Part shown: piece by piece, positions 15,080 through 63,662 of the stretch
Layout: every line of letters starts with the position of its first letter
How positions within the stretch are numbered: the stretch's first letter is position 1
Assembly (NCBI RefSeq): GCF_016433145.1
Contig: NC_058134.1
Location: 16,926,038 to 16,990,037, forward strand
Length of the DNA stretch: 64,000 nt
Source of the DNA: Gracilinanus agilis
Lineage: Eukaryota
Direction: 5' to 3'
Notes under the pieces: generated by a model
Seen by the model: only the letters and a program-made list of their open reading frames with translations
Told to the model about the DNA's origin: nothing
The model's database searches: none
Translations under genes and position numbers: made by a program

Positions 15080-16050
15080 TGCTAGTGCGTGCACGTACGG
15101 GGGCGCCGCAGTCTTGGGGAGGCTTTAAGGGGTGGTCTCTGTGGCCCTGGGGCAGAGCGCCCCATTGCCAGCCTCCGTGCCAGGACGCCAGGGTTAGGCT
15201 TCCTTCCTAGACCTCCACGGGCCGCATCAGGTTTGCCAGTGAATGCGGGGGCGGCTCTTTAGAAGGGCGAGCCCTTGGGGGCAGGGACGGAAGCCCCCCT
15301 GCTTCCCGGGCGGAGCCTTTCTTTCTTCCCTTGGGCAAAGGGGCCTGGGGGGCGGCCCCGGGGGGTTCCCCGAAAAGCCCTTCTGGGAGGACCCTCTTCG
15401 CGGCTGGAAACGTCTCGTTTCCGGACCTGATTTTGAGGATGCTCTCGCGGGGCTTCCAAGTGAGATTCCGCTTTCGTCCGCCGTGGGGGGGCCTCGGCGG
15501 AAGGGGGCTGGGCTGGAGCTTGCCTTGTCTCGCGCTACCTCCGCCTGGGGAGCCCGACTTCCGCGCTATAGAGAGAAGGAGCCGCGCGAGGAGCCCCGAA
15601 GCGCCCCGGAGCTTGGGCTCTGGGAACGAACGAGTCCGGGCAGGTTTGCTTTTACTCTCCGCGTGGCCGAACCTGGGCAGGCTCTGCCAAAGGACAGCCA
15701 GCTGGGCTCCGGACGGCCCAGAAGGAGGAGGTCGTCTTGGGGAAAGTGTGACGGTCCCTCCGTCCCCCCAGTGTGTTCCTTAAGCCAAGGCCGGCCCTCT
15801 CTCCAGCTCCCGACTTCCTCCAGTGGCGATGGAGCGCCGCGTGGCGTCCAGCGCGCCCGGCTCGTGGCAGCATCACTGGGAGAATCCTGACCAGGCTGGG
15901 GAGGGGGAGGCCGGGAGGGAGGCCAGAAAGGCAGGAAGGCCAGGACTGGCCGTAGGATGGAGAGAGGGGAGCCCAGGAGGACCCTTCGCTGGCGGGCTCA
16001 GATGCTGCTGCCGGGGGAGGTTTGGGGTAGAGAGAAGAAGTTCCATTTCG
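15080..16050. promoter_or_regulatory. Intronic CpG island between SNX10 coding exons 1 and 2
   Basis: Dense CpG, very high GC, no repeats. Confidence 0.7.
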
Positions 16051-16147
16051 GAGATAATGAGTTTGAGAAGGTTCCGGGACATCAGGTAGGATGGCAAACT
16101 GGATGGGCCAAATCTAGGTACTCTGCAGGCATTAAGAGAAAGAAAGG

Positions 16148-16628: not shown

Positions 16629-18293
16629 AAGCACCTGGGTCCGAACCTGGAGCAGCCACATAGATAAGGTCTTATTGAAGCTTCCGTCTGCAGAGCAAAG
16701 GTCTGAACGGAAAACAAAACTGAAGGCAGAATTAGCATCATGATTCCTAATTTAGAAAGTGACTTTTCTATAAACCATAGTGTAGAGGCTGACTTCCATT
16801 ATCTGACAGAATGCAAGCTGCTGCGTCTTGTGCTCCGGCCCCAGCCCAGAGGAGGTCCTCAGCTAATGTTTGTCCGGTGCCCGACTGACCGGTGAGACAG
16901 GACCGCTCCCACTTTGTGCATGGGGGAACCGGACCGCAGGCAAGTGGCTTCTCAGCTAATTCACCAGTGGTGGGCCCGGCCTCCCGCTGGACACCGAAGG
17001 GAACCCACGGCAAGCCCTGCCCTGCCCTCGCTCCGGCCCAGCATTTCCTCCCTCCTCCGGTGCCCATTTCATTGGGAGGACACACAGGAAAGGGTTAATC
17101 CTAGCCTGCCCTAGCCGAGCCGTCTTCTCCCATCCTCGATTTCTCGTTAGGCCAAACACGTCATTGAAATGTTTAAGAAGATTATTAAACTGATCCACCG
17201 CAAGGGCTGCTCAGAGCATCTCCCCAAGCCAGCCACGTGATGCTGCAGGCAGCCCAGAATGGCGCAGGGAGGAGCAGTGAGTCAGCTTTTCTTCCTTTTG
17301 AGAGCTGACGGCCGGCTCCCAAAGGATGTCTGGATCTAATTAAGAAACCCTCAGCAAACGCTGGTCTGATNNNNNNNNNNNNNNNNNNNNNNNNNNNNNN
17401 NNNNNNNNNNNNNNNNNNNNNNNNNNNNNNNNNNNNNNNNNNNNNNNNNNNNNNNNNNNNNNNNNNNNNNNNNNNNNNNNNNNNNNNNNNNNNNNNNNNN
17501 NNNNNNNNNNNNNNNNCTCTAGAATAAAAGGGAATCTTCTCTGCCTTTCCGGCAGTTGGATGATAAGCAGCAGTGCGCAGCGTGTGCCAGACCCAGGGCT
17601 AAATCGTGGGGATTCCAAGAGAGTCCCTGCCCTCTGGGAGCTTAGGTGGAACTGGGGAGACGCGTAAAAAAAGACTGAACAAGGGGGTGGGGGCTCAGGA
17701 TCTGCTGAAATGCAGAGGATCAGATCACAGCTGGGTGGGGAACTTTCCAGCTTGGATCCAGCCGCCTCTCCTTTCCCCATTAACTCTTCTTCCAGCGCTC
17801 TGTGTTCCTGCCAAAATGGCTAATTTGCTGTTATGTGTACAGAACACTCCATCTCCATCTCCATCTCCCTTTGCCTCGACCTCCCTCCTCGACTTTGCCT
17901 GGTTTCCTTCAAAACTGAGCTCAGAGGCCACATCCTCTAGGAAGGCTAATCCCTCTCCAGCATCTGCTCATCGGTTCTCCCCAAGAGATTACTCTTTCTC
18001 TCTCTTCTGTAACTTTTCTGTCTAGCTGGGCCCTCTCACTTCAGCCACCCGAGGCCATCACAACAACAAACCCTTATTTTCTGTCCTAGTAACAACTCTC
18101 AAGTCAGAAGGGCAAGGCCTAAGCAAACAGAGTCGAGTGACTTACCTAGGGTCTTACAGTGAGGAGTATCTGAGGCTAGATTGGAACCCAGGTCCTCCTG
18201 ACTCCAGACGTGGTGCTTTTATCCACTACAGTGTCACCTAGCTGCCCAGCTGACCCCATTGGGGTCATAAAAGCTCAGACTTAACATCTAGAC

Positions 18294-18484
18294 TAGGGGT
18301 TCCCAAACTTTTTTGCCTACCACCCCCTTTTCAGAAAAATTATTACTTAGCCCCCTGGAAATTAATTTTTAAAAATTTTAATAGCAATTAATAGGAAAGA
18401 TAAATGCACCTGTGGCCATCACCGCTATCCTGGATCTCTGCAGCACCCACCAGGGGGCGGTGGTGCCCACTTTGGGAATCACTG
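18294..18484 (-). mobile_element. hAT (Charlie-type) MITE, ~190 bp, copy A
   Basis: Terminal inverted repeats (TIRs) TAGGGGTTCCCAAA...TTTGGGAATCACTG. Flanks atctagac/ctctagag fit an 8-bp NTCTAGAN target. Reverse complement of the 62595-62789 element. Confidence 0.9.
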
Positions 18485-20329
18485 CTCTAGAGGGACCAGA
18501 ATGGTCATCAGCTTCCACCATCTCATTTTATAGTTGAGTAAATGGCCAGCTTATCCTGGTGGCTTCTCTGTCCCCGAATCATTGCCAGTTGTTGGATTGG
18601 TAAAACTGACCATCTATCCAGGACTGGCTGGCCAACCTCGTCCAGGGGTGCACTTCCCCTTCACTGCGGATGGAAACTGGGCTGCTCTTAGGAGCGTGTG
18701 GGCCAAGGCATCCTGTTGAGGATTCTGGGAAAGTTATTAAGATCAAAAAGGATTTATGCAAAATGGGCCAAGACTTTATCAGGGAAGCAGAACCTGCCAT
18801 AGTCCAAGGAGACCGAGTGTGCTTGAGTAAGTTATAGGGAATGACTTGCTTTTTCTCACCCACCGTCTCTTTTTCTTTTCAGTTTCTTTTCTGAAAATGA
18901 AAGCTTTTAGCCTCTGCCCTCAGCCTCGCTTTCCTTGTTTTACTGTAATGTAGATGCTCTTTCCCCACCTTTTTCTCAAGTTTTTGCTGGTTTCTCATCA
19001 GTGGGGGGGTAAAGAAACCAAAACTGCCCTCTTTTTCTCCCCCACCTCTCTACACAGGGTTCTCCCCCCTTTTCAAGGTTCCTTCTGACTCTCAAATTCA
19101 GTCTTTTGCTCTTGTGACTTTGAAATTTTGGAAAATCTTACACCCTTCTTTTCTGCTGCTCACAGGGTGGTTCATAGGGAACATACTTTACACATTTGAG
19201 TTGATAACATTATTAATATATTATTGGGCGGTGGGGTAGTGTGGGGAATAGAGTGCATGGCCTTGGGTCAGGAAGACCCAAGCTCAAAAGTGACTTTAGA
19301 CATTTCCTTGCAGTGACCTTGACCAAGTCACTTAACTTTGTCTCAGTTTCCTCATCTGTAAAATGAGCTGGAGGCAGAAATGGCAAGCCCCTTTAGTCTC
19401 TGCCAAGAAAACCCCAGATGAGGTCACAAAGAATTGGACAAGCCTGGAAGACTCGACAACAAATATATTATTCAAAGAGGCAGCGAGCCTCCGGCTGGGT
19501 GATATTTGACCAATCTCTAGTTCTGTAGAAGGTGCCAGCCTGCCCTATCCATGAAATCACAAGTCTAGACCTTCCCCTCTTCTTTCATGCCTCCATCTGT
19601 GCCCCTCCATTAGACTGTAAGCTCCCTGAGAGCAGGAATTGCCTTTCTTTTATTAATTGTATTCCTAGAGCTTAGCCAATGCCTGGCACACAGTAGGCTC
19701 TTAATAAATGTTTATTGTATTGGCATCCCTCTTAATGAGATGCAAACCCATCCTTTGGGGGGGGGGTGGTGGTGGGGAATATCCCACTGTAGAGAATTAG
19801 AGACCTCCTCCTTTCTTTTCCTCTTGTCCAGACCCATTTGGGTCCATCCCCTATACCTCACGTGCCTCGCCAGGTGACTAACCCTAAAGGGCAGAGCCAG
19901 GACCTACTTTTATTTCACAAGCTGGTGAAAGAAGGGAAAGGCCCCAGTTCCTTTTTTCTTTCCCATGTTGAAATGTAGAAGTACAGAATGGCTGGAAGAA
20001 AGAGGGTGAGGGGGGCGGTTGAGCCGTTTTCTCTGTCAGCCTTCCTGTCACTATGGGCAAGAAGGGGAGCCTTCCTCTTGGCCCCGAGTCACACATGGCC
20101 AGAAGCTGTCCCCAGAGCTCTCATACAGTCAAGTCGAACCAGGACTGGCCACTCTGAACCTGCTTCATGGGATGGTCTCTCAGGACCTACAAGTGAGGGC
20201 CAGGCACTGCTAGATGCTGGGAATGGAAAGACGGACGTTGGCCTCCCTGCCTCCAGTCTTTCCCCTATGCTCCCCATCCTCTAGTTTTCCAATCCATCCT
20301 CCACTCTTGCTGCCCAAGAGATTTTCTTT

Positions 20330-28854: not shown

Positions 28855-29899
28855 GTAAGTGGCCGGGGGTCTTGGGGATGGTGTCTAAGGTGGGGGGGGG
28901 AACCTCTCCCGACTGTCCCTTGTGGCCAGGGCCTCTCGCTTGCTCTGGGTGTGCCTCCCCCCCTGGAGCCCAGTGCTTGGCACATCGTGTGCTCAATGAA
29001 TGTTTCCTGTGCAGGTGAGCCGAAAGTCTCAAGCCCAGCTCACAGGTAGGGACAGCCAGGTGGTTTGGTGAATGACTAGAGCCCCAGGCCTGGAGTCAGA
29101 AGGAGCTGGGTTCAAATTTGGCCTCGGACACTTCCTAACTGTGACTGGACAAATCACTTCACTCATCTGCCAGTTTCCCCAACTATAAAATGGAGAGGAA
29201 TAATAGTACCTCTAGGGGCAGCAAGCCAGGTGGCTCAGTGGATAGAGTTAGGTCTAGAGCCAGGTGAATCTGGGTTCAAATCTGACCTCAAACACTTCCT
29301 AGCTGTGAGACCCTGGGCAAGTCAATTAACCTCAATTGCTTAGTCCCTACTGCTCTTCTGTCTTAGAAGTGATACTANNNNNNNNNNNNNNNNNNNNNNN
29401 NNNNNNNNNNNNNNNNNNNNNNNNNNNNNNNNNNNNNNNNNNNNNNNNNNNNNNNNNNNNNNNNNNNNNNNNNNNNNNNNNNNNNNNNNNNNNNNNNNNN
29501 NNNNNNNAACCTATCAAGAACTTTACCAAGAAATCCTCTGAAGTCTCCAAGGACACAAGCCAGAAATTAGGGGCAGGCAGGCAGATTTAGAGCTGGAAGG
29601 GATGGGGAAACTGAGGCCATCTCAGGTTAAGCAGCAAACAGATAGTGTCCCAGTTGGGGGTTGAATGCAGCCTGGCCCCCACAGCTCCCCAAACTAAGGT
29701 CCTTGATGGCCCAGCTGCCTGTCTTTGCCTCAGCAGCCTCAGTGCCTACAGGGGGCCCGGGACGTTTTGGGGATTCATAAACTTTGATTGGATTAAGGAT
29801 GGTTTTACTGCAGGTCCCCTCCCTCGAGGGCCAGGCGGTGGCCTCCTTCTGGTCACGTGGGGGTTCCTGTTCTGGTTCTGGTTCTGAGTTTTTCCCAGC

Positions 29900-30700
29900 G
29901 CCTCTGCTGAACCTAGAGGAGGTCTATTCATCCCCTGTATTAGAGCGCCACCTTGTGGAATTGCAGGCGCACAACACCTGGGGGCGCTGTGGGTGTCTTT
30001 TTTTCCTCTCAGACACTGTCATGGAAACAGCCGGGTCACGTGCTTCCGCAGTGCCGGTCCAGCCGGCCTTGCTCTAGCAGGCCTTGGGTATGGCGGCGGC
30101 AGCGATCCCAAACTGCCCCCAGCGGGGAGTCCTTCGGGGCCACGGAGCTGCCTGGGCATTTGCGGGATGGAGCCCAGCGGCCCCAGGCGCCGGGGCCCGG
30201 GATTAATGCCCGCTTTGGCCCAAGAGCAGCCACGGGGTGGCAGAGGCAGGCTTTGAACCCCTGGTCTTCCATCTCAGGGGCCAGCCCCGAACCCTGGCTC
30301 CTTTTCTAGGGGGGACCCCCTACTCTCCCCCACACCCTCAAATCCTTCTATTAAATGTGCCAGCGATCCCGGGGTGCGCGGCGCCTGGGGGTGCTGGTCC
30401 TGGTCACCAGCGGGTTTTTTCCGAGCTGGAAAGGGCCCCCGGCGACCCCGCTTCTGGCCCCGGGCGGTGCCCCCCCTCCCTTCTGCTTCTGGCCCCATCC
30501 GCTCTCCGGCCGCCCTTTAAAGGAGGAATCCCGAAAACTCAACTGAGAGATGAAGAGAGAAGCAGGGCCGAGCCAGTGAGCAGGCTGAGCCCTGGCAAGC
30601 CTGGGGCGGAGAAAAGATCCCGGAGCTGCCCCAGGCCTCCCCCTTCCCCCATTTCAGAGGCCCCTCCCTCAGGCAGTGTAGGGCCCACCTACCCCATCTG
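29900..30700. promoter_or_regulatory. CpG island in the intron after SNX10 coding exon 4, with CTCF-like motifs
   Basis: CpG-dense. CCACAAGGTGGCGC on the minus strand at 29945-29958 and ACACCTGGGGGCGC on the plus strand at 29974-29987. Confidence 0.7.
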
Positions 30701-32690
30701 CTGCCTAGATGGGCTGTTTCCCCTGAAGCCTTCCCGCCCACCCCTGGCCCCGTTTGAGGCTGGGGGCTTCAGCTGTAATCTTCTGGAGGACCAGAGGCTG
30801 CCTCCCTGGCCTTGCCTTTCTCCAGGGACTGCCCGAGGCTTAGGTGGCGCCCCCTAATGGGAAGAGGGTCATGGCTACTTCTCCTTGGTCCATCTGTTAG
30901 AGTCTGTCTGGGTACTGCGCCCAGACCTCGCCACGTACTTCCATGTTCTTGGGCTCAGGGATCGCACCGTGGTTGCCCAGTCTTATTGCAGGGCAGAGCA
31001 GCCTGGGAGTCAGAGGATCTGGAATCGAACTCTGCCCTCAGATGCTTCTGGTTCCTTGGGTGACCTTGGTAAAGTCCCTTGAACTTCCGGTTCCTCGTAC
31101 TAGACAGCCTTAAAGACCCCTGGATTTCTGAGTCATTTGAATTTTTATGGAGAAGTAGCATTAGAGGAGATACTGTGTGTCCCTGGGCAAGTCACTTAAC
31201 TTTCTGAGCTTCAGGCAATTCCCCAGGATGAGAAATGACTGACTCTTCTTTGGCCTTCAGCCTCAGGGAAGGGAATGGTCCCAGAGGGACATGCCCCCAT
31301 CAGGGAAATGACAAAACTCCATTCAGTTGTTTTCAAGTCAACAAACATTAAGCTCCTTCTTGAAATGACCCCATTTCAGAGCTGGTGCTGACTGGCTTGT
31401 ACAGATGAGTGAGCTACAGTTTACACGGTTCAGATACTTTTTGTCATTTGAGGCTCACATCACCCCATTAGGTAGGGTTTCTGGACAAGATGACTCCCAT
31501 TTCACAGATGAGGAAACTGAGGTTCCCCTGAAGGAATTTGAAGTGACTTTCCCACAGTCCTACTGCAGGAAGTGCCAGAATTCTAAGTTTAACTCTTTTT
31601 GCTCCAGCCTCCTCCTGCCAAATAAGTCTTTATAAAGCGATGGGCCAGCAGTGGATAGAGCACTGGGCCTGGAATCAGGAAGATCTGAGTTCAAATCCAG
31701 CTTTAGATACTAGCTGTGCAGCCCACACAGCCTCTGCCTCAGTTTCCTCATCTGTAAAACAAGACAGAGAAGGAAATGGCAAGCCATTCCAGCATCTTTG
31801 GCAAGAAAAGCCCTAAAAGAGTCAACAGGAGTTGACCACAACTGAAAATGACTGAATTAATATAGTTTTATTTTAAAAATATTTTTCCATGGTTCCATGA
31901 TTCATGTTCTCTCCCTCCCCTCTTCCCTACCCCCTCCCAGAGCTGACAAGCAATTCCATGGGATTATACATTTTTTAATTTTAATTTTAATATTTTATTT
32001 TAAAAATATTTTGAAAATGACTAAGTTAAGAACTTTAGAAGACACAAAACACTACTAGCACAATGACCTCCTGATGAAAGGGTGGAATATTGAAAATATG
32101 ATGACATTCTTAACTTCCTGAATAGCTTTTGCATTATGATAGTGCCATTATTTCAAAACCTGTTGAGATCATTCTGACAGAAGAAAAGGGGCATTCCCTA
32201 GGTTTGAATTCTCCTGACTGGGGAAGCCAATTGCAAATCTCAGTTTCCTCATCTGTAAAATGGGGACGATTATGCCCATCCAGGAGCTGAGTCCCAAGAT
32301 TTTGGCAAACCTTCAAATACCATCTGAATAGCAGTGGTTGTCATTATTCCTATGTTTCTTCATAATGATTAGTCACTGAGTTTGCATTTTTTCAGTAAAA
32401 ATGATTGTCCTCCACGTGTCTAACTGGTGCAGGATGGCACGGTTTTTGTTTCTTCTGGTGATTAAATGTGAAAAAGATTTTGCTTTGTCATTTCTGCGAT
32501 GAGAAAGTTACAGAATGCATCAGCAAGAAATCTGCCCCGGTGGCCTCAGGTAACTTGCTTTTTTTGTTCCTAGTAGTCCTAATAGTCTGCATTGATGTAT
32601 AGTATAGGGTTTTAATGTTTCATCAAGCCCTTTTTAAGCCTGATCTACTAGCTGATATTGGCAGATAGTTCCTTAAGGGTGTCTTTAGCA

Positions 32691-32869: not shown

Positions 32870-33433
32870 TGTAGCTGAGTGATATGGGAATGAAGTGCTA
32901 GTGTTTTCCCTTTTTAGCAGATGAGGAAACTGAGGCAGAGGTGAAATGAGTTGCCTAGGTCACACTGCTAGTGTCTGAGGCTGGATTTGAATTCCGCTCT
33001 CCCTGACTCCAGATCTAGTGTTCTCTCTATCCACTGTCCCACCTCACTGCCTAATTTGGATGTCTGATATCATTTGGGAGGTGCAATTCTTATTAGCTCT
33101 GCTTTATAGATGAGGGAGTGGCAAAGAGAAACAGGGAGGGTTGAATTCAGAAATGGGCATCTGCCGCCAACCTTGCCTACCCTTAACATCTGTCGTTTTT
33201 TTCCCCTGTCAGAGTTTTGTTTGGTTTCTGTGGGTGAAGAGGCATATTATCCCTTTGAAACTAGTAGGGCCCTTCCTTACTTGTTGAATCCAGGCCCCCC
33301 ACTCGTGAACATTGGCAGCCCTGCCCAGCTCACCTCTTTGATTCAGAAGGCCCCCATAAAGCTTTTTCCCCTTTCCTAGCAGAAGTCTGTTCAATAGAGG
33401 GCACCAGAGCACAGATCATGGATGTTGTTAGTG

Positions 33434-33610: not shown

Positions 33611-35499
33611 CGCGGCCGAGTCGTGTTTTCCATTAGAATTGTGTGTATATAAAGCACCTAATAAAATCACAGTGAGGAAAACCAGATTTTGTTACTCGGA
33701 CTAGTTTAAGGGGGGAAATGTATTTTGTCTCTGTACGGCTTAAACTTGGGAAGCAAAAGGAATGGCCCACATTTGGGGGCCTGACATTTCCCAGTGTCCC
33801 TAACTCGCTCCCCGAAAGCCATTCGCAAGGATGATTTCTAATGCCCGTGAGACGTGGCTTCCTAAAGCTTCCTGGCTGAGACAAGGATTACTTTTGATTC
33901 CTTCTGTAAGAGGGCTGCCCCTTAGCATTCAGGTTTACATGGATTTGGTAAGCAGGTTTGTTTAGAGCAGCCATTGTTTGTTGAAAATCTCCATTCCGTT
34001 GGAGAATTTGTTTGAGACGTTGGACTTTTAGATGAGATTCATTTATGGTCCCTATTAAATGTGAAGTAGTTAAGAAAAAGCCTTCCGCTTTCCCAGGAGT
34101 CTGTTTGCCATCCAGCACTCTGCTCAGGGGTTCCCTGCTCAGGGAATATGTTACTCATGCCCATGGGTGGTGGTTCTCTGCCTCCTCATACCATCATGTA
34201 TGTGTTTCTGGGTTGTAGCCTCTTTCCACTCAGAAGAATGGGAGCGCGTGGAGGCAGAAACTTTCTCATTTTGTCTTTGTATCCTCAGCATCTGGCACCC
34301 AGCAACAATTGCAGCTTATACTTGTTGGTTGCTAGGTTGAATGCATTCTTTCTGCCCCCTCCCTCTACCCCACTCCTTTGGAGAATTTGTTTGAGACTTT
34401 GGTTATATATATATATATAAAAATAATTTGGAGTCCCCATTAAGTGTTTAGCATTTTAAAAACATATGATCAGTTTAAAAAACAAATCAAAACCCTCCCC
34501 TTCCATCTTAGGATCAATCCTGTGTATCTGCTCTAAGGCAGAAGAGTATTAAGGACTAGGCAATGGGGGTGAAGTGACTTGCCCAGGGTCACCCAGCTAG
34601 GAAGGGTCTGAGGCCACATTTGAACCCAGGACCTCCAATCTCTGGCCCTGGTTCTCAATCCATTGAGTCACCCAGCTGCCCCCCATATTAGATTTTCTGA
34701 GGGTTCCCAATGTTATCCATTACTAGGTCACTTCCTATAGGACAACTTTATTCATCCCCATTGGTTAGTACCCTGTCTCTTCAACTGACCCTATGTTTAC
34801 AGCTCTGTTTTTGTGTGGTAGCCCTCTCTTCCACCCAGAATCATGTCAGCTTCCTGAAGGCAGGCAGTTTTTCTTTCTGGCTTTGTATCCTCAGTGCCTA
34901 ACACCCATGAATGATCCTGTTCCTTGGTTGATATTCTAACCCTTAGCCCTATCCCAGAAGAATGTTACTTCCTTGAAGTCAGGCAGTTTTTTTTTTATCG
35001 TTTTATAGCTCTAGAACTGTGATCTTGGTCACATTATAGATGGGGAAACTGAGGCAGGAAGGGAAGTGTCTTGTCCAAGGTCCCACAGGTAGTGACAGAG
35101 GTAGGATTTGAACTTCGACCCTCTGACTTCCAAAACCAGGACTCTTTCCACTGGATCACTTTGTCTTTGTATCCCCAGCACAATGGGTGGCACATAGGAA
35201 GTTCCTTCCTTGGATTGGATCCAGATTGCTTTATGGAAAGCTATGTGGCTGATATAAGATAGCAGGAGGAGAAAAATCAGAATCAAGCCTCTTAGGGGCT
35301 CTGCCTCTGCATGCACAAATTGAGGGAAGCCTGGCAGGCAGGACTGAGATGCACTGATGTCGCTGGACTCCTGGGCAATGCCCGGTTCCCTTTCTATGGT
35401 GATTCCTCTTGGGGATGACTTTTTTTTTTTTTCTTGAACTCACATAAAAGAAAGGAAGCCGATCTGTTTTTTTTTTTTTTTTTAATTTTAAATTTTACA

Positions 35500-36400
35500 A
35501 TGGCCCATCCTCGTACTTCAGGGCTGGCACAGTGCTCTCCAAAGCCAGCTTAGTGCCCAGAAGATGGAGCCGCATCAGGCTGCGTGGGATGCAGCTGCTT
35601 CCGAAAAATGCCCTCAGGGGGTTCCAGCATCCTTCCAGCATCCTTCCAGCATCCTTCCTCCTGGCCCGCCCCGCCCCGCCCCGCCTCACCCCGCCCTACC
35701 CTCCAGGCTTCGGAGGCTGCGGCAAGCTCCCTCCGCTTCCTCTCCGGGCCGCCCTCCAGGTGGCGCCGTTGAGCAGGAAAGAAGCCCCGGCCTAATGAAT
35801 CCAATGGAAAGTCAAATTGGAAATTGAATTATAGCCGGGGAGAAGGGACGGTAGCCTTGAGGTTGTGCTCGGCCCGGGCTCTCCGAGAGCTCGCTCGCTC
35901 GCTGCTCCCATGTGTTAGCTTGCTCGCGAGTTAATAACGGCGCCGGAGCAGTTCAAGGCTTGGGCGAATTGCTTTCGACATGAAATAAAGCCAAAATGAA
36001 TTTGTGTCCGATATCATTGACATTAGTGCTCATTACTTCTGGGGTGTAATGCCTCAAACCATCGGAAATCAATTTTAAAGATTGCCCATTATTTTATAAA
36101 GAAAATAAAATACATTTCCAACAGCAACAAAGCAGTAAGTACCAGCGCAGGGAGAGTTACTTATCCCCTCGGCCGCTTGGCTGGCTGGCTGGCGGTGGGG
36201 CCGGCAGGCGGGCTTCCTGCCTGGGCTGAAACTGGGCCCCCCCAACCCCCCCTCCCAGCTCAGCCCAGCCCAGCATCCCTGCCCGGCCCTTCCTCTCTGG
36301 AAATATTTAATGCTCCAGAGCTGTTTACAGATGTGGAAAGGAAACTGGAGGGGGCGAGCCTGAGGAGCCTGGCTGGGCTCTGATGGGGTTGAGCCACTTT
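35500..36400. promoter_or_regulatory. Intronic CpG island with Sp1-type boxes, CCAAT and a CTCF motif
   Basis: (CCCCG)n near 35665-35695, CCTCCAGGTGGCGC at 35753-35766, CCAAT near 35801. Confidence 0.7.
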
Positions 36401-38693: not shown

Positions 38694-39181
38694 GTAATTC
38701 CTTCCGATCATTTTTCATATATCATACGTGTATGTGTATTTACATTCCACATATTTGTGTACAGACATACACACACTTCACTTTTTTGTTGATGTAAAAC
38801 TAAGATAATGAAAAAATTAATTGACTGAGATTTTATTGAGCTGTGACAGCTCATCATAGAAGTCTTCACACACACCTCCACACTGAATTAATGAATGCAG
38901 TAGAAATTCAATTATCTGCATTCTGATNNNNNNNNNNNNNNNNNNNNNNNNNNNNNNNNNNNNNNNNNNNNNNNNNNNNNNNNNNNNNNNNNNNNNNNNN
39001 NNNNNNNNNNNNNNNNNNNNNNNNNNNNNNNNNNNNNNNNNNNNNNNNNNNNNNNNNNNNNNNNNNNNNNNNNNNNNNNNNNNNNNNNNNNNNNNNNNNN
39101 NNNNNNNNNNNNNNNNNNNNNNNNNNNNNNNNNNNNNNNNNNNNNNNNNNNNNNNNNNNNNNNNNNNNNNNNNNNNNNNNN

Positions 39182-42399: not shown

Positions 42400-44500
42400 G
42401 ACCACCTGGCAACAGAAGAACCGCTGACCCTCCGATGATACGCCCCCCCCCCCCCCAACCCTCCCGAGAAATGATTACAGTTTGTAGGAGGGAGGCGAGA
42501 ATCCCAAAATATGTGAATTAGGTAAGATGTCCAAAAAAAAGAAGAAAAGAATAGCAAGTGTTTACAAAGGCCGCCGGTGGCCCCTCCTGCAGAAGGAGAG
42601 CCCCAAGGCACCACTGTCCCCGGAAGCCAGACCCCACCACGGGGCGTCCCTTCCTGGCAGGACACTTTCCTCCCTCATTGTACTGACAAGGGCACTCACT
42701 GGGCAGAAGGGATTTAGCGTCCACGACCCTTTCCTTTTTCTGCGAACTCCCTCTGAACCACGGACTCGGTAGGCCAAAGGCAACAACAGCCCAGGCTCGA
42801 GCCCCATTTCCCCTGGCATTTACACTCTGGGCTTTGGCCCCTTTCAAGGGGCGCAGCCCGAGGGCTCCCTCCTCGGCGGCTGTGCAGCTCCCGCCGCGCA
42901 GCTGGGGGCACCGTCCTGGCCAGCTTCTTACCTCCGGGCTCCCCACCCACCCACTTGCACTGACTGGGTGCAGGGGCTGCCTCAGTGGCCTGCGCACCAG
43001 CTCCCGCGCTCCCTCTGCGTGGGTCTCTCTCTCTCTGCCCCGCACACGCGCGTTCCTCCCTCCTCCCCAGCCTGGGCTCGCGGCGTGCACAGGCTCCAGC
43101 AGGCTCGAGCTGCTGGGACTGCTTGTCAGGTAACCAAGCAGCCGGCCTTGGGCCGGTAACCCATGGCAACCGCCCTGGTAACCCATAGCAACGGCAACAA
43201 AAAGGGGAGGGGGAGGAGTGGGAACAACCATGTACACAAAAAGGCAGCCATTGACTGCGCAGACAGACTGGGAGCGGGCCTGGGGTGGGGGGGCTGCCAA
43301 GGATTAAACCCCCCTCGAGCCAGGCCTAGGATGCTTCCTGCCCCCGCCCTACCCCACCCCATCCCACCCTCCCGCTGCCGTCCTAACCGAGGACGGAGAG
43401 AGTCGGGGGTCAGGACTTTAGTGCCCCACCCCCCTTCCTGGGCCACCTCTTCCAGGCCACATCCGGGACAGGGAGGGGCTCCCGCCAGGCCTCTAGTTTT
43501 GCTGAGGACAGGGACTTGTTTATTCTTGAAAAAGCGGCCCTGCCTGGAGCTGAGCTGAGTTGTGCGTATTTGGGTGTGCCTGCAAGGCTGTAGCCGTGGG
43601 TGTGAGCAGTTGTGAGTGTGCACTGTTTGCACGTCTACCCACCCGCGGGCCTGCGCGGGGGTAGGGGGTGGGGGTGGTCTGCATCTACAGTCTTCTCGAG
43701 CGGTGCAGCCATGTTTTCAGGGCCGCCCTGCGTGCGCGCGCCTGTCGGGCTCGGAGCTCAGCGTGCGTGCGCGCGCTCTTTTGTCTGGCTGGGCCCGGGT
43801 ACAATGGCACGCCTTTGTGTGTGCGTGCACATGATGGGCGCGCGCGCGCGCCGAGCCTGTCCCAGCCCCCTGGGGGTTGCTCCTGGTCCCAATGCCGCAG
43901 TAGCTCTTTGTTCCACTGGGGTTCGGAGCTGGGGCATCCTCCGCCAGTGCCCCGGCCTCGAGGGTCAGGCTTGGGTGCCCAAGACCTTAAGTCTGCGGCT
44001 GAAAAGCCACGGCCTCCTTTGGTGTCTGGTCTGCACGCACTCAGGGTTAAAGCCCTCCCTCCCACGCACGCCCGCTCCCCACGTGCCCCTCCTTTCCTGG
44101 GCCGCCCTCGCTCGGGAACCGCCCTCCGGTCTGCTTCCAAAAAGATCTAGTTTTTGGGCGCAGCGTTGGGACGGTGCGGAGCATTCTCTCCGGGAAGCGA
44201 GGCACCTTTGTGCTAGACTACGACGTATCCCTGCTGGACCCCGCCCTCCGGGGTGACTGTCCCTGAAGGCATTGCTTCGGAGGAAATAAGCATCATTCAC
44301 CCCGTGTACGTGTGTGTTCCATGTCAGTGTCCATCCGCACGTAACACACATGTTTAGGTTCCGGGTCCCTGCCAAAGGAACCAGCATCTTATGGCTAACT
44401 AGTAAGCTTACTGGGGGCGCAGAGCTAAGTAGGGCGCCGAGGAATCACAGTATGGCAGACTGTACGTAGGGGCCGCCGCATCAGTGTCTCCAAAGCGGGC
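42400..44500. promoter_or_regulatory. Large CpG island about 3 kb past the SNX10 stop; promoter-like, with RFX X-boxes
   Basis: CpG-dense and repeat-free. GTAACCCATGGCAAC at 43156-43170 and GTAACCCATAGCAAC at 43178-43192. Confidence 0.8.
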
Positions 44501-47499
44501 GTTTCTCTGCTCCAACACAGCCCCTACCTATTTTGTTGCAAGTCTCCTAACTGACCTCCCCGAAAGCTGCAAGTCGTCCCTTTTATGTAGCTGCCATAAT
44601 GGTTTTCCCAAAATATAGGTCTGATCATTTCACTCCCTCTCAACCCTCCCTAGTGCTTCTAGGACCAAATGTCATTTCATCTTTATCTCATCCTTTTCTG
44701 TTGTCTTTTTGTGTATAAATTTTTATATCTTGCATAATTATTATTTTTAAATGCTCACCTTCTTTAGAATCAATGCCATGTATTGGTTCCAAGGCAGAAG
44801 AGTAGTAGAGGCTAGGTAATGGGGCTTAAGTGACTTGCCCAGAGTCACACAGCAAGGAAGTATCTGAGGTCACATTTGAACCCAGGACCTCCCATCTCAA
44901 TCCACTGAGCCACCTAGCTGCCCACAATGTGTGTAATTATTAGTAAAGTGGGCAACTAGGTGACTCAGTGAAGAGAGTCCAGAAGCCTTGAGCTCAAGTC
45001 CAGCCTCCGATACTTCCTAGCTGTGTGACTCCAGGCTAGGCATTTAACCCAATTCTCCTCAGTTTCCTCATCTGTAAAATGAGCTGGAGAAGGAAATGGC
45101 AACTCACTACAGTATCTTTGCCAAGAAGATCCCAAATGGGGTCACAAAAAGTCAGACATGGCTGAAACATGATTGAACAAATGAGTACTGTAGCAAATCT
45201 ATATAATTTTAAATAAGTAACTTACATTGGAGGTACACATCCAGTTGTCTATTGATAGGAATGTGATAAAAAAATTTGGGAGACCTCAACGCCATCCTAC
45301 TTAGAACTAATGAAGTGTATGTCTGTCTGTCCATCTGTCTGTTGATTTTTGTTGTTCTTGCTCAAGACCTGTCATTCGCTGATGAGGGAACCTCCTCTAC
45401 CTACCTAGAGACCAAATGAAGAGGGGTGAAGTTAGATGACAGCCAGGGTCACATGGTAATAGACGGTAAAATGGGCGAAGAGGGGAGGCTTGACCAGGCT
45501 TTCCTGACTCCCCAGGCTGTCATGCCCACACCCGCAGTATTACAGGTACAAACACCATACATAATGCAGTTCTCCTAACTCTAAAACTTAACATTTAGTT
45601 CCACTCTTTTATTTTTCAGATGAGGAAACTGAGGAAGGCTAAAGTGAAAGGATTTGTTCAAGTTTATAAGGGCAAGTAAGTAGCAGAGAGGATTCAATCC
45701 ATTATTCTTTTCAAATGAAAAAGATTTTATCACAACCCTATGGATATTTATTAATTTATAATAGAATTAATATTTATTATGAAAATATAACTATTATATA
45801 GAAGAAATGTTAATATTTAGAAGACTTGTGCCAATCATCATTGTTCTTATCATTTCAGGACTTAAGATCTGTGTTACTATGGGCAAAGGTCATTTAACTT
45901 CCACGAACTCAGTTTTCTCATCTGTAAAATGGGGACAATAATACTTGTGCTATTATTACTATGTACTATATTACCTTTCAGGGTTATAGTGATTAAATAA
46001 TCGACATATGGCACACAGACACATACCTACCCATCCATATGTATATATACCATAGTAAATTATACATAATATATATATACATATTTTTTTGGTCCAAGTG
46101 TATTCTCTGACTCCTCCTAATTTTATGATCACCAGAATGCCATTTAACGCTTAGACCACGATCACAAATTATGTCAGTTTCTAATCCAACGCAGCTTGGT
46201 GGTCCAGTGGATAGAGCTGGTCTTGAAGTCAAGATCCGAATTCAAATCCAGACTCAAAGACACTTGGCCAAGTCACTCGACCTCATTTGCCTCAGTTTCT
46301 TCATCTGTCAGAGCTCTTATAATTATGACTAATACTAGCTAACATCAATAAGTGTTATTAATAAGTGACTGAGTGATTAGTAGGTGAACCCGAAGGTCCC
46401 TTGCAGTTCTCGATCTCTGGTACTGCCGGTTCCGAATTTAGGAATTTAGCTGGTGGAAGAGCTGCTCCTTCAGCTTGGGCTGCCCCCACGAACGGCTAGA
46501 GCACCGGCCACACGCCTGCCTTTCACACACAAAGGCAAACGTGTACAAATCAAGTTTTTGTCGTTGCATCACGCTACCAAGGCCAAGTTTTTATTGGACT
46601 CTTGTAAAACGAATCATCGCCGCCTTATTTACCTTGTGGGGAAGCCGCGTCTTTCATAGACGGGTTTGCGTAGAGTGAGGCCTGCCACGGTCCAATCTGC
46701 ATGGCCTCAGGCTTTCCCTCGGTGCTCAAAGAGAGCCTGGGGGGCATTGAGGGACGGAGGCGGAGGGATCGCGCCATGGAGCCCCTTCCTCTCCGGCCCG
46801 TGCACCAGGAGTGCCCGTTGCTTTCCTTTCCTTTTTTTTTTTAAACAAAAGCAATTCCGGAAAAGTGCACATTTCCCGGGTGCCAGTTCCCGTTTTGCCG
46901 GCCCTTCCTGCAAACAGCGGGAGCCCCAAGGCCTCGTGGCGCGGAGTCCTGTAAGCCCCAGTCCGGGCTGCGCGGACGCACAATGAATCGNNNNNNNNNN
47001 NNNNNNNNNNNNNNNNNNNNNNNNNNNNNNNNNNNNNNNNNNNNNNNNNNNNNNNNNNNNNNNNNNNNNNNNNNNNNNNNNNNNNNNNNNNNNNNNNNNN
47101 NNNNNNNNNNNNNNNNNNNNNNGAGCATCTGGAATTGCCGCGCCAGTGAGGTTTAGTGAGGACGACCTATTGCTGGAGTCAGGCGGCCCCTTTGTAATCA
47201 GCCGCCCGCTCTGCCGGGTGCGGGGCGGGAGGGGGGCTGGAAGGAAGAAGCCCGCGAAGGACATTACCTTCCTGCGCGAGGGGAAGGAAGTTTCGCTCCC
47301 CCCCCCCCCCCCCCATATTGCTGAGGAGCGCTGGCCTTCCCAGCTGAATGGAAACATTAATTGCCATCATAAGGGGATGCGGTTATGTAAGCGCCCCGGG
47401 AGAAGGCGGAGGGAGGGAGGGAGGGAGGGATTGAGCCTATTGCCAAATGAGGCCATATTCGGACTCTTTGGATTTGGGGGTAGGAGGGGGAAAAGGGGG

Positions 47500-47645: not shown

Positions 47646-50304
47646 NNNNNNNNNNNNNNNNNNNNNNNNNNNNNNNNNNNNNNNNNNNNNNNNNNNNNNN
47701 NNNNNNNNNNNNNNNNNNNNNNNNNNNNNNNNNNNNNNNNNNNNNNNNNNNNNNNNNNNNNNNNNNNNNNNNNNNNNNNNNNNNNNNNNNNNNNNNNNNN
47801 NNNNNNNNNNNNNNNNNNNNNNNNNNNNNNNNNNNNNNNNNNNNNNNNNNNATGCCATGTCCATAAATGAATAATTCATAATAGTGAAAGAGAAACTGGG
47901 CTCCTCTCAAGCACATTGCCTATCTCCTGGTCAGACCACACAAATCCCAGATGTCATCGAATGAATGCTTGGCCTGTAATCTGAGCTGTCTTCTTTTCCA
48001 TGTTGCATAATACTTAATGAAGAATACCACTAATAAAAAAATCAGCAATGTCCAGCCTCTTTGTCACACCCTGAAAGTTGAATGAACAGCGGCACAGTTT
48101 CATAGAAAGAAGCTGGGCCTGGAGGGAGAAAGCCGGGGTTTGAATCCTGTATCAGCCACCTCTTGGATAAACCACTTAACCTCTGGTGGTCTCAGTTTCC
48201 TTATCTGCAAAAGGAGGGGGTTGGACTAGGTAGCTCACTTCCAGCCGTGAACCCAGGAGCCTGCGTTCCCAACTTCCCCCATGTTTTTGCTTTGGTAATC
48301 TGTGAATTCCCGGGTTCACCCGGGTCCCAGAAGTTAAGGCCAAATGGTTTATTTGTATTTCTCCAGCCGAGTCCTCTTCCTCGAGTACCGGGTGATAAGA
48401 TGAATCTAACAGCTCCTCCGTGGGGATCACTTATACACGAAGATAAGCAGAGCCCCACATTTAAAACATTTTCCCTCGCTTCCCTGATAAAGGAGTCTGT
48501 AGTAACAAGTGCATTAGTCCGACATTTGCAACTTTTAAAGAGAAACACGGCTCGGGCTCTAGTTAGCCAATAGGTCGTTAATTCGTCCATACTTCTCCAC
48601 CAAGATTTATCGCTGACCGGCAGCTAAAATATGCTTTTAAGGGAACTGTCAAGCCTTCAAATAGGCAACAGAAAATAGATTCCAGCCTTTTACAACAAAC
48701 ACAGATACGGTTACAATGACAATCTGTCTCCGACAAAAAGACTCCCACTCCTCGGCCAGTGACAGTCTGACCCATCTGGAACACAACCGGATTAGAGGAG
48801 ATCCTGAAAGAATCTGAGTGTTTCCACCTTCGAGTCTGGCCTGCGAGAGGTGGATCCGAGGTTGAAATGTTTGGGCCAAATATTTCTTTGTGGCCACTTG
48901 GTTGATGAGTTGTTTCTCTTGCTTTGGGTCAAGGTAAATGAATGTATCAAGATCAACTCTAGCCATTTACTTTAATTTATTCCCATTGTCCTTCACCCTG
49001 AAAGCAGAAGGCGAGCAGGGAGTTGTTATTAGTGGAATCCTTAGGAACTGGGAGGATAAACAATGTACATCAGAGAGGTCAGGATGGGGGACGCTCTATA
49101 ATCTTAAGATAACTTGTGTAAACCACCGCAAGGACTGGGAATGGGGTGTATAAACACACTTCAAGTAAGTATAGATGGGCTAATCTTTCACCCAGGCCTA
49201 TTTTTTTTTAAAGGGATGGTATGTAATTCGAACAATTCTAACCGTGTCCAATCGCTCTCTGCTTGGAGGAGAAAGGACACTTACCTGAGTTATAAATAGA
49301 CTACGGCATCATGGGGCCGGGGGGGAATGGGCAGGGCTAGAAGATCTGGCTCGGGTCTCTTCTGGCAGCTGGCCAGGCAGCTTTAGGCGGGTGGACCCGG
49401 TTTGGGCCTCTGTTTTGTCATCTGCAAAATGAAGAGGTTGGACTCTACGGTTCTTCCAGCTTTAAGCCCATTATTGTACCTGCCTGATAGGATTATTGAA
49501 TGAGTTGAGCTCTCTGCCAACCTGAAAGCATTCTGTAAATAGCAGGTCTAGTGGCACCAAGGCCCATTCCAGCTGGAATATTCGGTGCCTTTGCTATGGG
49601 CATCTGCTTCCCCTTGGGAGGTAGACCTTGCCTCTCTGAATTCTGTGTTGTTTTTTTGTTTTTGTTTTTAAACCCTCACGTTCTATCTTAGAATCAATAC
49701 TGTGTATTGGTTCAGAAGAGTAGTCAGGGCTAGGCAATGGGGGTTAAGGGACTTTGCCAGGGTCACACGGCTCTCCTAATTCCTTTTTTCCCCTATGTTT
49801 ATACCACTTTATTTTTTTAATTCATCATTGATTGATTGATTGATTTTTTAAGAAAAATTTTCTATGGTTATGTGATTCATGTTCTTACTTTCCCCTTCAC
49901 CCCTCCCCTCCCCTCCCCCCCCAACATATCAGCCACTGGTTTTAACATGCGTCATCTATCAAGACCTATTTCCATATTATTGATAGTTGCATTGGTGTGG
50001 AGCTCTCCTGATTCTTGAGGCAAACTTGGGAACCTCATTACAAATGGGATGCATGCTTATCCTCAGAAGCACTAGAGAAGAAATCCTTTGATTTGTAAGA
50101 TCGGGAGAGGGTGATAGTCACTTGTGGTCTGTGCCCAGGTCTACCAAGTTTAGAACCAACAAAAGCAGACCTCTAGAGGCCGGGGTGCCTGGCAAGAAGC
50201 AGAGATAGATATTTGTCTTCCTCTCCCTGAGCACTATGGGCTAGGACCAGGTGATGGTAAGGGTCCTGAATGGGAAAGCAGGTTTCTGGCTAGCCCAATG
50301 TGTC

Positions 50305-62005: not shown

Positions 62006-62594
62006 ATGATTATCTAGTATTTCTCCAGCACCTACTCTTTACTTTGTGTGTGTGTGTGTGTGTTTTTTTTTTACAAATATTATCTCATTTTGTCCTCACA
62101 ATAACCCTGGGAGGTAGATGCTATTATTAGCCCTGTTTTGCACATGAGAAAACTGAAGCAGGCAGAGATTAAAGGACTTGCCCAGGGTCACATGGCCAAG
62201 AAGTATCTGAGGCAAGATTTGAACTCAGGTCTTCCTGATTCCAGGTTCGGCACTCAAACCACCAAGAGGTATCATCTCTTATTGAGCTGAATAGTTGAAA
62301 TGATGAATTATAAATTATAGGACTAATTGTGGTAACTGGTGACACTACCCAGTGTCTTTTAGTTTGCTAAGTATACATTAGATAGGTCTCATTTGAGCCT
62401 TAGAACAAGCCAGTGGGGGGGGAGATGGTGCAGCCACCTTTCTTTCTCTACAATCTGGAGGGGTTCCTGCCTTGCCATTCTGATTTCCTGTCCTTCCTGT
62501 ACCCCTATCCAAGTTAAACCATCCCATCCTCCTTGGGCTACCTTCCATCTTCTTCAGTATATGGGGCATTTGCCTGTTGGCTCTCCCTTAAGAA

Positions 62595-62789
62595 CAGTGA
62601 TTCCCAAAGTGGGCGCCACTGCCCCCTGGTGGGTGCTGCAGCGATCCAGAGAGGTGGTGATGGCCACAGGTGCATTTATCTTTCCTATTAATTGCTATTA
62701 AAAAAAAAACAAAACTAATTTCCAGGGGGGCTAAGGAATAGTTTTTCTGGGAAGGGGGACAGGAGGCCAAAAAAGTTTGGGAGCCGCTG
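62595..62789 (+). mobile_element. hAT (Charlie-type) MITE, copy B of the 18294 family
   Basis: TIRs CAGTGATTCCCAAA...TTTGGGAGCCGCTG. Degenerate 8-bp flanks cttaagaa/ccttagac. Confidence 0.9.
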
Positions 62790-63662
62790 CCTTAGACTGT
62801 AAGTCCTCTGAAGGCAGGGCAGCTGCTTTTGACTTTCTCTGGATGCCCAGGGTTTAACCTAGCCCATAGCAAATGCTTCCTATGTATTTATTTGTTGACT
62901 GCCTGGCTGCCTCTGCCTCTGTGAATCTCCGATGCCCGGGATGCCTTCCCTTCTCATCTTTGCCTCTTAAAGAATAGATTGGGTGCTCCTACTTCCTACT
63001 AGAGTCATTTCCTGACCTCCCTTCCTTTTAGTATTCTGTCCTTCGGGAAATTAATTTGTATTCATTTGATTTATGTAATGCGATATTCCCCCGTTGGAAA
63101 GGAAGCTTCTCGTGGCCGCAGACCTGAGAAGAGTGCAGACTGCCTTGCAGATTCCAAGTAAAGCCGGTGCCTGGCACAGAGATGGCACAGTCCCTAAACA
63201 ACGGAGTGACTTTTCCCCTCCATAGCACAATCTCTTGTACAAAATGGTGCCTAATCGATGTTGATGCCAATCTCTATTTCACAGAAGAGGCAGCCGAGGC
63301 TCAGGAGGGAGGAGATTATGCTCCCCTGGCCAGCCCCGAATTCTTTTCCCGGGCCACGAGAAGCCTGCTTGCTTTCGAATCCTCTTGAGGTGCCCAGAAG
63401 AGGCCCCCCGCACCGTGTCTCCCCTCTCTCCTCCTCCAGGAAGCCCTCATATCCAGGCATGGCCCGGCTTCTCTCTGGGCTAGCAGACTCCCCAGTTGGA
63501 GCCGGGCCCAGCAGCGGCAGCAGCAACTAGAGCATTCCCTGAATATCCAGCCGGTGCGTCCTCCTGGACACCGAGGAAGCCACATTCAGTAGCTGAGCAG
63601 CTGAAGGCATGAATAGCGGGCCCTGATGGTGCCGGGTTAGAGATAGGGAGATGCTGGCAGGA

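What the first reader, a model, noticed from the sequence alone, without database searches (positions are those of the whole stretch)
18294..18484. hAT MITE family that carries a CTCF core motif
Seen: both copies contain the motif near one TIR, CCACCAGGGGGCGG at 18447-18460 (+) and CCACCAGGGGGCAG at 62619-62632 (-). Known: repeat-driven CTCF site expansion is documented for SINEs in several mammals, including opossum. Inference: a DNA-transposon MITE may have spread CTCF sites across this genome, a route I do not recall being described.
Basis: partly seen in the sequence, partly recalled or inferred. Interest (0 to 1): 0.72.

Follow-up and report, generated by a model that had tools for sequence, protein, structure and literature searches.

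The report
Opossum hAT MITE carrying CTCF motif

Summary
Window 18294-18484 (+) and 62595-62789 (-) are two independent insertions of one short family. It has 14-nt terminal inverted repeats starting CAG, decayed 8-bp target duplications of the nTCTAGAn type, and no coding capacity, so it is a hAT-type MITE. Both copies carry a full match to the CTCF core consensus at the same element position, 25-38 nt from one end (18447-18460 +, 62619-62632 -). They differ only by a CpG-to-CpA change.

The two motif hits therefore trace to one ancestral sequence, not to two chance events. The copies are about 9% diverged, roughly 8-21 My old by a published marsupial rate.

Non-autonomous hAT elements (MER20, MER91B and others) are documented carriers of bound CTCF sites and loop anchors in placental mammals. 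They already appear in Table S3 of the paper that reported the opossum SINE expansion. What may be new is a young opossum-lineage family of this kind, which that paper's species-specific-word method and 36-bp mapping could have missed.

The scan's first stage flagged this family on other DNA of the same genome (37 notes); none of the eleven distinct MITE notes displayed had been followed up. Verdict: a new member of a known kind, of modest interest.

The parts
18286..18293 (.). left target-site duplication of copy A (ATCTAGAC)
   Evidence: Matches 18485-18492 at 6 of 8 positions; chance of 6 or more matches is 0.004. Fits the hAT target pattern nTnnnnAn.
18294..18484 (+). MITE copy A, 191 bp, TIR to TIR
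   Evidence: No ORF lies wholly inside the element; the two that overlap it (47 aa and 41 aa) both run out past its right end.
18294..18307 (+). left TIR of copy A (first base mutated C to T)
   Evidence: Inverted-repeat arms found; aligns with CAGCGGCTCCCAAA of copy B.
18447..18460 (+). CTCF-core-like 14-mer of copy A, with a CpG at core positions 12-13
   Evidence: Zero mismatches to CCASYAGRKGGCRS.
18471..18484 (+). right TIR of copy A (reverse complement CAGTGATTCCCAAA)
18485..18492 (.). right target-site duplication of copy A (CTCTAGAG)
62587..62594 (.). target-site duplication of copy B (CTTAAGAA)
   Evidence: Matches 62790-62797 at 5 of 8 positions; chance of 5 or more matches is 0.027.
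62595..62789 (-). MITE copy B, 195 bp, opposite orientation to copy A
   Evidence: Its flanks are not homologous to those of copy A, so it is an independent insertion.
62595..62608 (+). motif-side TIR of copy B (CAGTGATTCCCAAA)
62619..62632 (-). CTCF-core-like 14-mer of copy B, with the CpG decayed to CpA
   Evidence: Zero mismatches to CCASYAGRKGGCRS.
62776..62789 (+). other TIR of copy B (reverse complement CAGCGGCTCCCAAA)
62790..62797 (.). target-site duplication of copy B (CCTTAGAC)

Best explanation
The stretch is one of two independent insertions in this window of a short (about 190 bp), non-coding, non-autonomous hAT-superfamily transposon (a MITE) in the opossum genome. A hAT transposase supplied in trans cut and pasted it into nTCTAGAn-like targets, probably about 8-21 million years ago. 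The family's founder carried a full match to the CTCF core consensus (CCACCAGGGGGCRG) in the G+C-rich subterminal block next to one TIR. Part of that core (the C5/G5 run) belongs to an imperfect extension of the terminal inverted repeat. Every new insertion therefore delivered a ready-made, oriented candidate CTCF site.

Shown here: the element's anatomy, the independence of the two insertions, and the motif at the homologous position in both. Inferred by analogy with MER20, MER91B and B2: a minority of copies, those left unmethylated in open chromatin, are probably bound by CTCF, and most are silent carriers that decay at the CpG. Nothing shows that either copy in this window is bound or functional.
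For: Anatomy. There are 14-nt TIRs. The 8-bp TSDs match at 6/8 and 5/8 positions (p = 0.004 and 0.027). The TIRs start CAG/TAG. No ORF lies wholly inside the element.

Relation to known hAT elements. The terminal 16 nt are 14/16 identical to the published OposCharlie1 (hAT) terminus, compared by eye with the consensus in the supplement of PMC3621081.

Independence. The flanks of the two copies are not homologous.

Motif. It matches the IUPAC core exactly in both copies, at the same alignment columns. The only difference is a CpG/CpA transition.

Extended TIR. The left end aligns with the reverse-complemented right end through the C5 run.

Age. K2P distance is 0.098. With the 3.21e-9 per site per year rate quoted in PMC3621081, this gives about 15 My, with a 2-SE range of 8-21 My.

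Precedent. hAT non-autonomous elements are bound by CTCF and anchor loops in eutherians.

Leads only. 37 unchecked first-stage notes on other windows of this genome describe a 192-194-bp hAT MITE with a CTCF core.
Against: Only two copies could be examined, so the ancestral state, copy number and subfamily structure rest on n = 2 plus unchecked notes.

Keeping the motif in both copies is what neutral decay predicts: the probability of at most one difference in 14 nt is 0.63. There is thus no sign of selection.

The one published opossum CTCF ChIP study credited the lineage-specific expansion to MAR1_Mdo SINEs and did not report this family. Its method could have missed it.

Both copies sit in CpG-depleted DNA (CpG o/e 0.22-0.29), which is typical of methylated sequence, and methylation disfavours CTCF binding.

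No autonomous partner was identified.
Confidence: 0.6

Rival explanations
1. Inert look-alike. The core match is a by-product of the G+C-rich subterminal inverted repeat of a hAT end. Copies are methylated from insertion onward and essentially never bound by CTCF, so the family spread motifs but not binding sites.
For: Half of the core lies in the extended imperfect TIR. An exact core is expected about 0.35 times per Mb of sequence, so some family will carry one by chance. Local CpG o/e is 0.22-0.29. Schmidt et al. reported only MAR1_Mdo for opossum. There is no excess conservation of the motif.
Against: The 14-mers are canonical high-affinity-type words, and copy B has no CpG left in the core. 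Every well-studied TE family with such a core (B2, MER20, MER91B, SINEC_Cf) has a bound fraction. Schmidt's screen used species-specific words and 36-bp reads with Bowtie -m 3. Thirty-six-mers over the motif differ by only 2-3 bases between the two copies, so its silence on this family is weak evidence. Diehl et al. raise the same concern about the method.
Confidence: 0.3
2. Functional pair. The two copies, whose motifs point towards each other (+ at 18447, - at 62632; 44 kb apart), act as convergent loop anchors enclosing the 3' part of SNX10 and its downstream region.
For: Convergent orientation is read directly. Earlier notes place SNX10 in this window (unchecked).
Against: Convergent orientation is expected for one in four random pairs. 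Five other CTCF-like cores lie in the window. No occupancy, Hi-C or conservation data are available. The enclosed interval is not an obvious regulatory unit.
Confidence: 0.05
3. The subterminal block is mainly a binding site for the element's own transposase or for a host repressor (for example a zinc-finger protein targeting the family). Its likeness to CTCF's motif is incidental to that role.
For: hAT transposases bind subterminal repeats (established knowledge). The block is partly mirrored at the other end. The motif-bearing right half is less diverged than the left half (4.6% against 15.6%, Fisher p = 0.018).
Against: The CCACC half of the core is absent from the other end, so the full 14-mer is not a repeated transposase site. 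The difference between halves is based on two copies and on an A/T-rich, indel-prone left half. This reading does not exclude CTCF binding.
Confidence: 0.1

Closest known systems
MER20 / MER20B (eutherian non-autonomous hAT-Charlie elements) and MER91B (hAT-Tip100)
   Same: They are short non-autonomous hAT elements whose family sequence carries a CTCF motif. Copies are bound by CTCF, anchor loops and TAD borders, and mediate binding-site turnover.
   Different: Those families are ancient (MER20 about 90 My) and eutherian. This one is in a marsupial and looks young, about 8-21 My. Binding is shown for them and not for this family.
MAR1_Mdo SINE expansion of CTCF sites in opossum (Schmidt et al. 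2012, PMC3368268)
   Same: Same genome, same idea: a lineage-specific repeat carries an M1-type CTCF motif to hundreds of places.
   Different: MAR1_Mdo is an RNA-copied SINE, whereas this element has TIRs and an 8-bp TSD. The SINE heads in this window carry a weaker word (CAGCTAGGTGGC...), while the MITE carries canonical words. Canonical words would not register as species-specific in that study's screen.
B2 SINE (mouse, rat) and SINEC_Cf (dog) CTCF expansions
   Same: A repeat-borne CTCF core is spread by transposition, and only a fraction of copies is bound.
   Different: Those are retrotransposons with copy-and-paste spread through RNA. B2 also carries the upstream M2 motif.
OposCharlie1 (OC1) hAT transposon and its 192-bp MITEs in marsupials (PMC3621081)
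   Same: The terminal 16 nt are 14/16 identical, the MITE length is similar (192 bp), the TSD type is the same, and the age range is similar (15-45 My for OC1 transfers).
   Different: Beyond about 21 nt the ends differ from the OC1_Das consensus (by-eye comparison), and OC1 ends hold no CTCF core. This is therefore a related Charlie-like family, not an OC1 deletion derivative. The OC1_Md consensus was not available to check.

Membership tests
hAT-superfamily non-autonomous element (MITE) | 8-bp target-site duplication | tested here: met
   Copy A: ATCTAGAC / CTCTAGAG, 6/8. Copy B: CTTAAGAA / CCTTAGAC, 5/8. Chance probabilities are 0.004 and 0.027. The duplications are decayed, as expected at about 9% divergence.
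hAT-superfamily non-autonomous element (MITE) | Short TIRs beginning YARNG, and target preference nTnnnnAn | tested here: met
   The 14-nt arms are 79-81% complementary. The ends read TAGGG/CAGCG and CAGTG. Three of the four TSD copies have T at position 2 and A at position 7.
hAT-superfamily non-autonomous element (MITE) | Small size, no coding capacity | tested here: met
   The copies are 191 and 195 bp. No ORF of 30 aa or more lies wholly inside copy A; the two that overlap it run out past its end.
hAT-superfamily non-autonomous element (MITE) | Many dispersed copies in the genome | tested here: inconclusive
   The window holds two copies with unrelated flanks. A genome-wide count was not possible. 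The 37 first-stage notes elsewhere in the genome are unchecked leads.
hAT-superfamily non-autonomous element (MITE) | Autonomous partner with matching termini and a hAT transposase | not testable with these tools
   No opossum genome or repeat library was on hand. The TIR is 14/16 identical to OC1, which is suggestive only.
OC1 (OposCharlie1) deletion-derivative MITE | Both ends homologous to OC1 over tens of bases (positions 1-58 and 104-192 in OC1_Das_NA) | tested here: not met
   By-eye comparison with the OC1_Das consensus: similarity stops after about 21 nt at one end and about 16 nt at the other. The OC1_Md consensus was not available.
CTCF-binding site | Match to the core (M1) consensus | tested here: met
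   Both copies have zero mismatches to CCASYAGRKGGCRS. Only 3 exact matches occur in 64 kb, against 0.022 expected.
CTCF-binding site | Occupancy by CTCF (and cohesin) in vivo | not testable with these tools
The published opossum ChIP peaks are not in the held supplements.
Repeat-driven CTCF site expansion (B2 / MAR1_Mdo / MER20 type) | Motif present in the family's ancestral sequence | tested here: inconclusive
   It is present at the homologous position in both copies, with a CpG/CpA difference consistent with an ancestral CpG. The sample is only two copies.
Repeat-driven CTCF site expansion (B2 / MAR1_Mdo / MER20 type) | Family copies enriched among ChIP-defined binding events | not testable with these tools
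   No ChIP data could be reached. Schmidt et al. name only MAR1_Mdo for opossum, but they screened only species-specific words.

The most novel reading that the evidence does not exclude
A young, didelphid-lineage hAT MITE has seeded thousands of canonical, oriented CTCF cores across the opossum genome, and a substantial share are bound and act as loop anchors. This would be a second, DNA-transposon-driven wave of CTCF site birth in opossum. The 2012 ChIP study could have missed it because the words are canonical rather than species-specific, and because 36-bp reads over the motif map to many copies. It would be the first recent (under 25 My) cut-and-paste-driven CTCF expansion shown in a mammal.
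Probability: 0.2. Interest if true: 0.55.

Novelty: new member of a known kind. Interest (0 to 1): 0.3.

Why it matters
Repeat-borne CTCF sites are a main source of lineage-specific genome folding. For recent expansions the textbook cases are SINEs, and hAT MITEs are known only as ancient eutherian fossils (MER20, MER91B). If a young marsupial hAT MITE with a canonical core is bound, the early, still-decaying phase of a DNA-transposon-driven expansion could be studied directly. Motif-intact and CpG-decayed copies could be compared, and methylation could be set against occupancy. It would also show that the published opossum picture (MAR1 SINEs only) is incomplete for method reasons. If unbound, it is an ordinary repeat with a chance motif.

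Tried and rejected
Sequencing runs. The look-up of sequencing runs was tried twice, and read laying depends on its run ids. This ruled out a genome-wide copy profile, ChIP evidence and cross-species empty-site checks.

Public DNA collections. The viral, metagenome and bacterial/archaeal genome collections were not scanned. They hold no opossum genome, and the refusals argued for caution.

Rfam. No family matched anywhere in the window, so no known MITE-derived miRNA is present.

Local hairpin around the motif. It is not better than shuffles (z = -1.2 and -1.4).

Segmental duplication. Rejected as the source of the two copies, because their flanks are not homologous.

Further or degenerate copies. 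None were found by blastn or by the nhmmer profile.

Shared repeat behind the other five CTCF-like cores. Rejected at 44% column identity.

Identity with OC1 MITEs. Rejected beyond the TIR.

Earlier findings by sequence. The search was blank.

Literature. I found no paper on an opossum or marsupial hAT MITE with CTCF. Absence from this library is not proof.

Position weight matrix. No PWM score was computed, because no matrix was available from a tool.

Full report
**What is in the sequence**

Window 18294-18484 runs from one terminal inverted repeat to the other of a 191-bp element. A second copy lies at 62595-62789 on the opposite strand.

blastn gives 86% identity over the full length and finds no other copy in the 64 kb. 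An nhmmer profile built from the two copies also finds only these two. A global alignment gives 168 matches, 17 mismatches and 10 gap columns, for a p-distance of 0.092 and a K2P distance of 0.098.

That is 2 matches against 0.16 expected in shuffles. They occupy the same alignment columns, so they count as one ancestral sequence inherited twice, not two independent occurrences.

**What kind of element it is**

- The ends form 14-nt inverted repeats: CAGKGRTTCCCAAA on the motif side, and CAGCGG/TAGGGG...CCCAAA on the other side.
- Copy A is flanked by ATCTAGAC and CTCTAGAG (6/8 identical). Copy B is flanked by CTTAAGAA and CCTTAGAC (5/8 identical). The chance probabilities are 0.004 and 0.027.
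- An 8-bp duplication, a T at position 2 and A at position 7 of the target, and TIRs beginning YARNG are the hallmarks of the hAT superfamily (established knowledge).
- No ORF lies wholly inside the element.
- The flanks of the two copies are unrelated. They are therefore separate insertions, not a segmental duplication.
- The terminal 16 nt are 14/16 identical to the terminus of OposCharlie1, a hAT element known from opossum and other marsupials. Similarity stops after about 21 nt (by-eye comparison with the consensus printed in the supplement of PMC3621081). The element is thus a Charlie-like relative, not an OC1 derivative.

I could not name the family, because no repeat library was on hand.

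**Genome and age**

Earlier notes of this scan place the window at the opossum SNX10 locus (unchecked by me).

PMC3621081 quotes a neutral rate of 3.21e-9 per site per year for opossum and wallaby. Half the pairwise distance then gives about 15 My, with a 2-SE range of 8-21 My, or about 12 My without the CpG-context changes. This rests on two copies and assumes a star-like history. It is an inference.

**The motif**

Both 14-mers match the IUPAC core CCASYAGRKGGCRS with no mismatch. Only three exact matches exist in the window, against 0.022 expected from base composition.

The single difference is CG in copy A against CA in copy B at core positions 12-13. This is the usual decay of a methylated CpG. 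A second CpG just downstream has decayed in copy A instead.

The motif lies 25-38 nt from the element's end. When the left end is aligned with the reverse-complemented right end, similarity continues past the 14-nt TIR through the C5/G5 run. The CCACC half of the core is missing at the other end. The core therefore sits partly inside an imperfect extended TIR.

The local hairpin potential is not above shuffles.

Keeping the motif in both copies is not evidence of selection. At 9.2% divergence, the probability of at most one change in 14 nt is 0.63. The motif-bearing right half is less diverged than the left half (4.6% against 15.6%, Fisher p = 0.018). With two copies and an indel-prone A/T-rich left half, I draw no conclusion from this.

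**How surprising it is**

An exact core is expected about 0.35 times per Mb of random sequence of this composition. Across the consensus sequences of all repeat families in a genome, one or a few families carrying it by chance is the expected starting point of any repeat-driven expansion.

**Comparison with what is known**

That is right: Schmidt et al. 2012 credit an opossum expansion of some hundreds of sites to MAR1_Mdo SINEs (PMC3368268).

That route is well described for placental mammals:

[quoted passage not shown] A MER20 insertion maintains a conserved loop in mouse (PMC6979391).
- MER20 and MER91B are enriched at loop anchors and domain borders (PMC9902604).
- hAT and TcMar elements are enriched for CTCF binding (PMC7156512).
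- hAT-Tip100 is the only family enriched in five-way conserved sites (PMC13399162).
- A review lists MER20 DNA transposons among CTCF-bound TEs (PMC7786948).
- Schmidt et al.'s Table S3 of repeat fossils at deeply conserved CTCF sites is full of non-autonomous hAT elements: MER20, MER20B, MER91B, MER102b, MER119, MER117 and MER103. Their hAT classification is from my knowledge of RepeatMasker classes.

The mechanism is therefore known. What may be new is a young family of this kind in a marsupial.

**Why the opossum ChIP study may not have seen it**

That study looked for repeats only among species-specific over-represented 14-mer words. The MITE carries canonical words that all species use.

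Reads were trimmed to 36 bp and dropped if they mapped to more than three places. The 36-mers that cover the motif and TIR differ by only 2-3 bases between the two copies here.

Diehl et al. raise the same concern about that method. The study's silence on this family is weak evidence against binding.

**What could not be done**

The first query held an N run, which I corrected; the second query held none. I stopped there and sent no letters of 17300-19500 to any search tool afterwards. As a result there is no genome-wide copy set, no ChIP read evidence and no cross-species dating.

The first stage of this scan flagged the same kind of element on other DNA of this genome. Thirty-seven notes hold both 'MITE' and 'CTCF', describing 192-194-bp copies and up to five per window. 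None of the eleven distinct MITE notes displayed had been followed up. These are unchecked leads. They fit an abundant family whose consensus holds the core, but they are not independent tests.

**Mechanism and odds**

My best reading is a hAT MITE whose founder happened to carry a canonical CTCF core in its subterminal block. Cut-and-paste transposition spread oriented candidate sites. Most copies are methylated and silent and decay at the CpG. By analogy with MER20, MER91B and B2, a minority are bound.

The anatomy is shown. The ancestral motif rests on two copies plus leads. Binding is inferred.

- The main rival is that no copy is bound (0.3).
- The convergent orientation of the two motifs, 44 kb apart, is a one-in-four coincidence, and the window holds five more CTCF-like cores. 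I give a functional loop between them 0.05.

**Verdict**

This is a new member of a known kind, of modest interest, with a cheap and decisive test available to anyone with the genome, its repeat annotation and the existing ChIP data.

Noticed in passing
window 7701-7714 (+), 29945-29958 (-), 30847-30860 (-), 35753-35766 (+), 51001-51014 (+): Five further CTCF-core-like 14-mers lie outside the MITE copies: one exact (51001) and four with one mismatch. The window total is 7 against 1.18 expected in shuffles. They do not share a repeat (44% column identity). The one at 35753 sits in a run of GC boxes.
   Followed up: partly
window about 901-1900, 15101-16100, 35401-36100, 43301-44600: Four CpG-island-like stretches (GC at least 0.55, CpG o/e at least 0.6 in 500-bp windows), which may be promoters of SNX10 isoforms or neighbouring genes. 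Both MITE copies lie in CpG-poor DNA (o/e 0.22-0.29).
   Followed up: no
window 2895-2916 (-), 9857-9878 (-), 29223-29244 (+), 33028-33049 (-), 44899-44920 (-), 46192-46213 (+); also a decayed copy at about 18150-18262 next to copy A: There are at least six heads of a tRNA-derived marsupial SINE carrying the weaker CTCF-like word CAGCTAGGTGGC. These may be the MAR1-type elements that Schmidt et al. linked to opossum CTCF sites. Identity with MAR1_Mdo was not tested.
   Followed up: no
window 18276-18293 and 62790-62807 (reverse complement): Beyond the 8-bp duplication, the left flanks of the two copies share GACTTA..C..TCTA at nearly the same offset. It does not score above shuffles in local alignment. 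It may be an extended target-site preference or chance.
   Followed up: partly
copy A 18294-18484 against copy B 62595-62789: Divergence is uneven: 15.6% in the A/T-rich left half against 4.6% in the motif-bearing right half (Fisher p = 0.018). This could reflect subfamily structure, mutational bias or constraint. It cannot be resolved with two copies.
   Followed up: partly
window 3433-3785, 17371-17516, 29378-29507, 38928-39181, 46991-47122, 47646-47851, 53633-53812: Seven runs of N, 1401 bases in all. They were left as they are. One lies 780 bp upstream of copy A.
   Followed up: no
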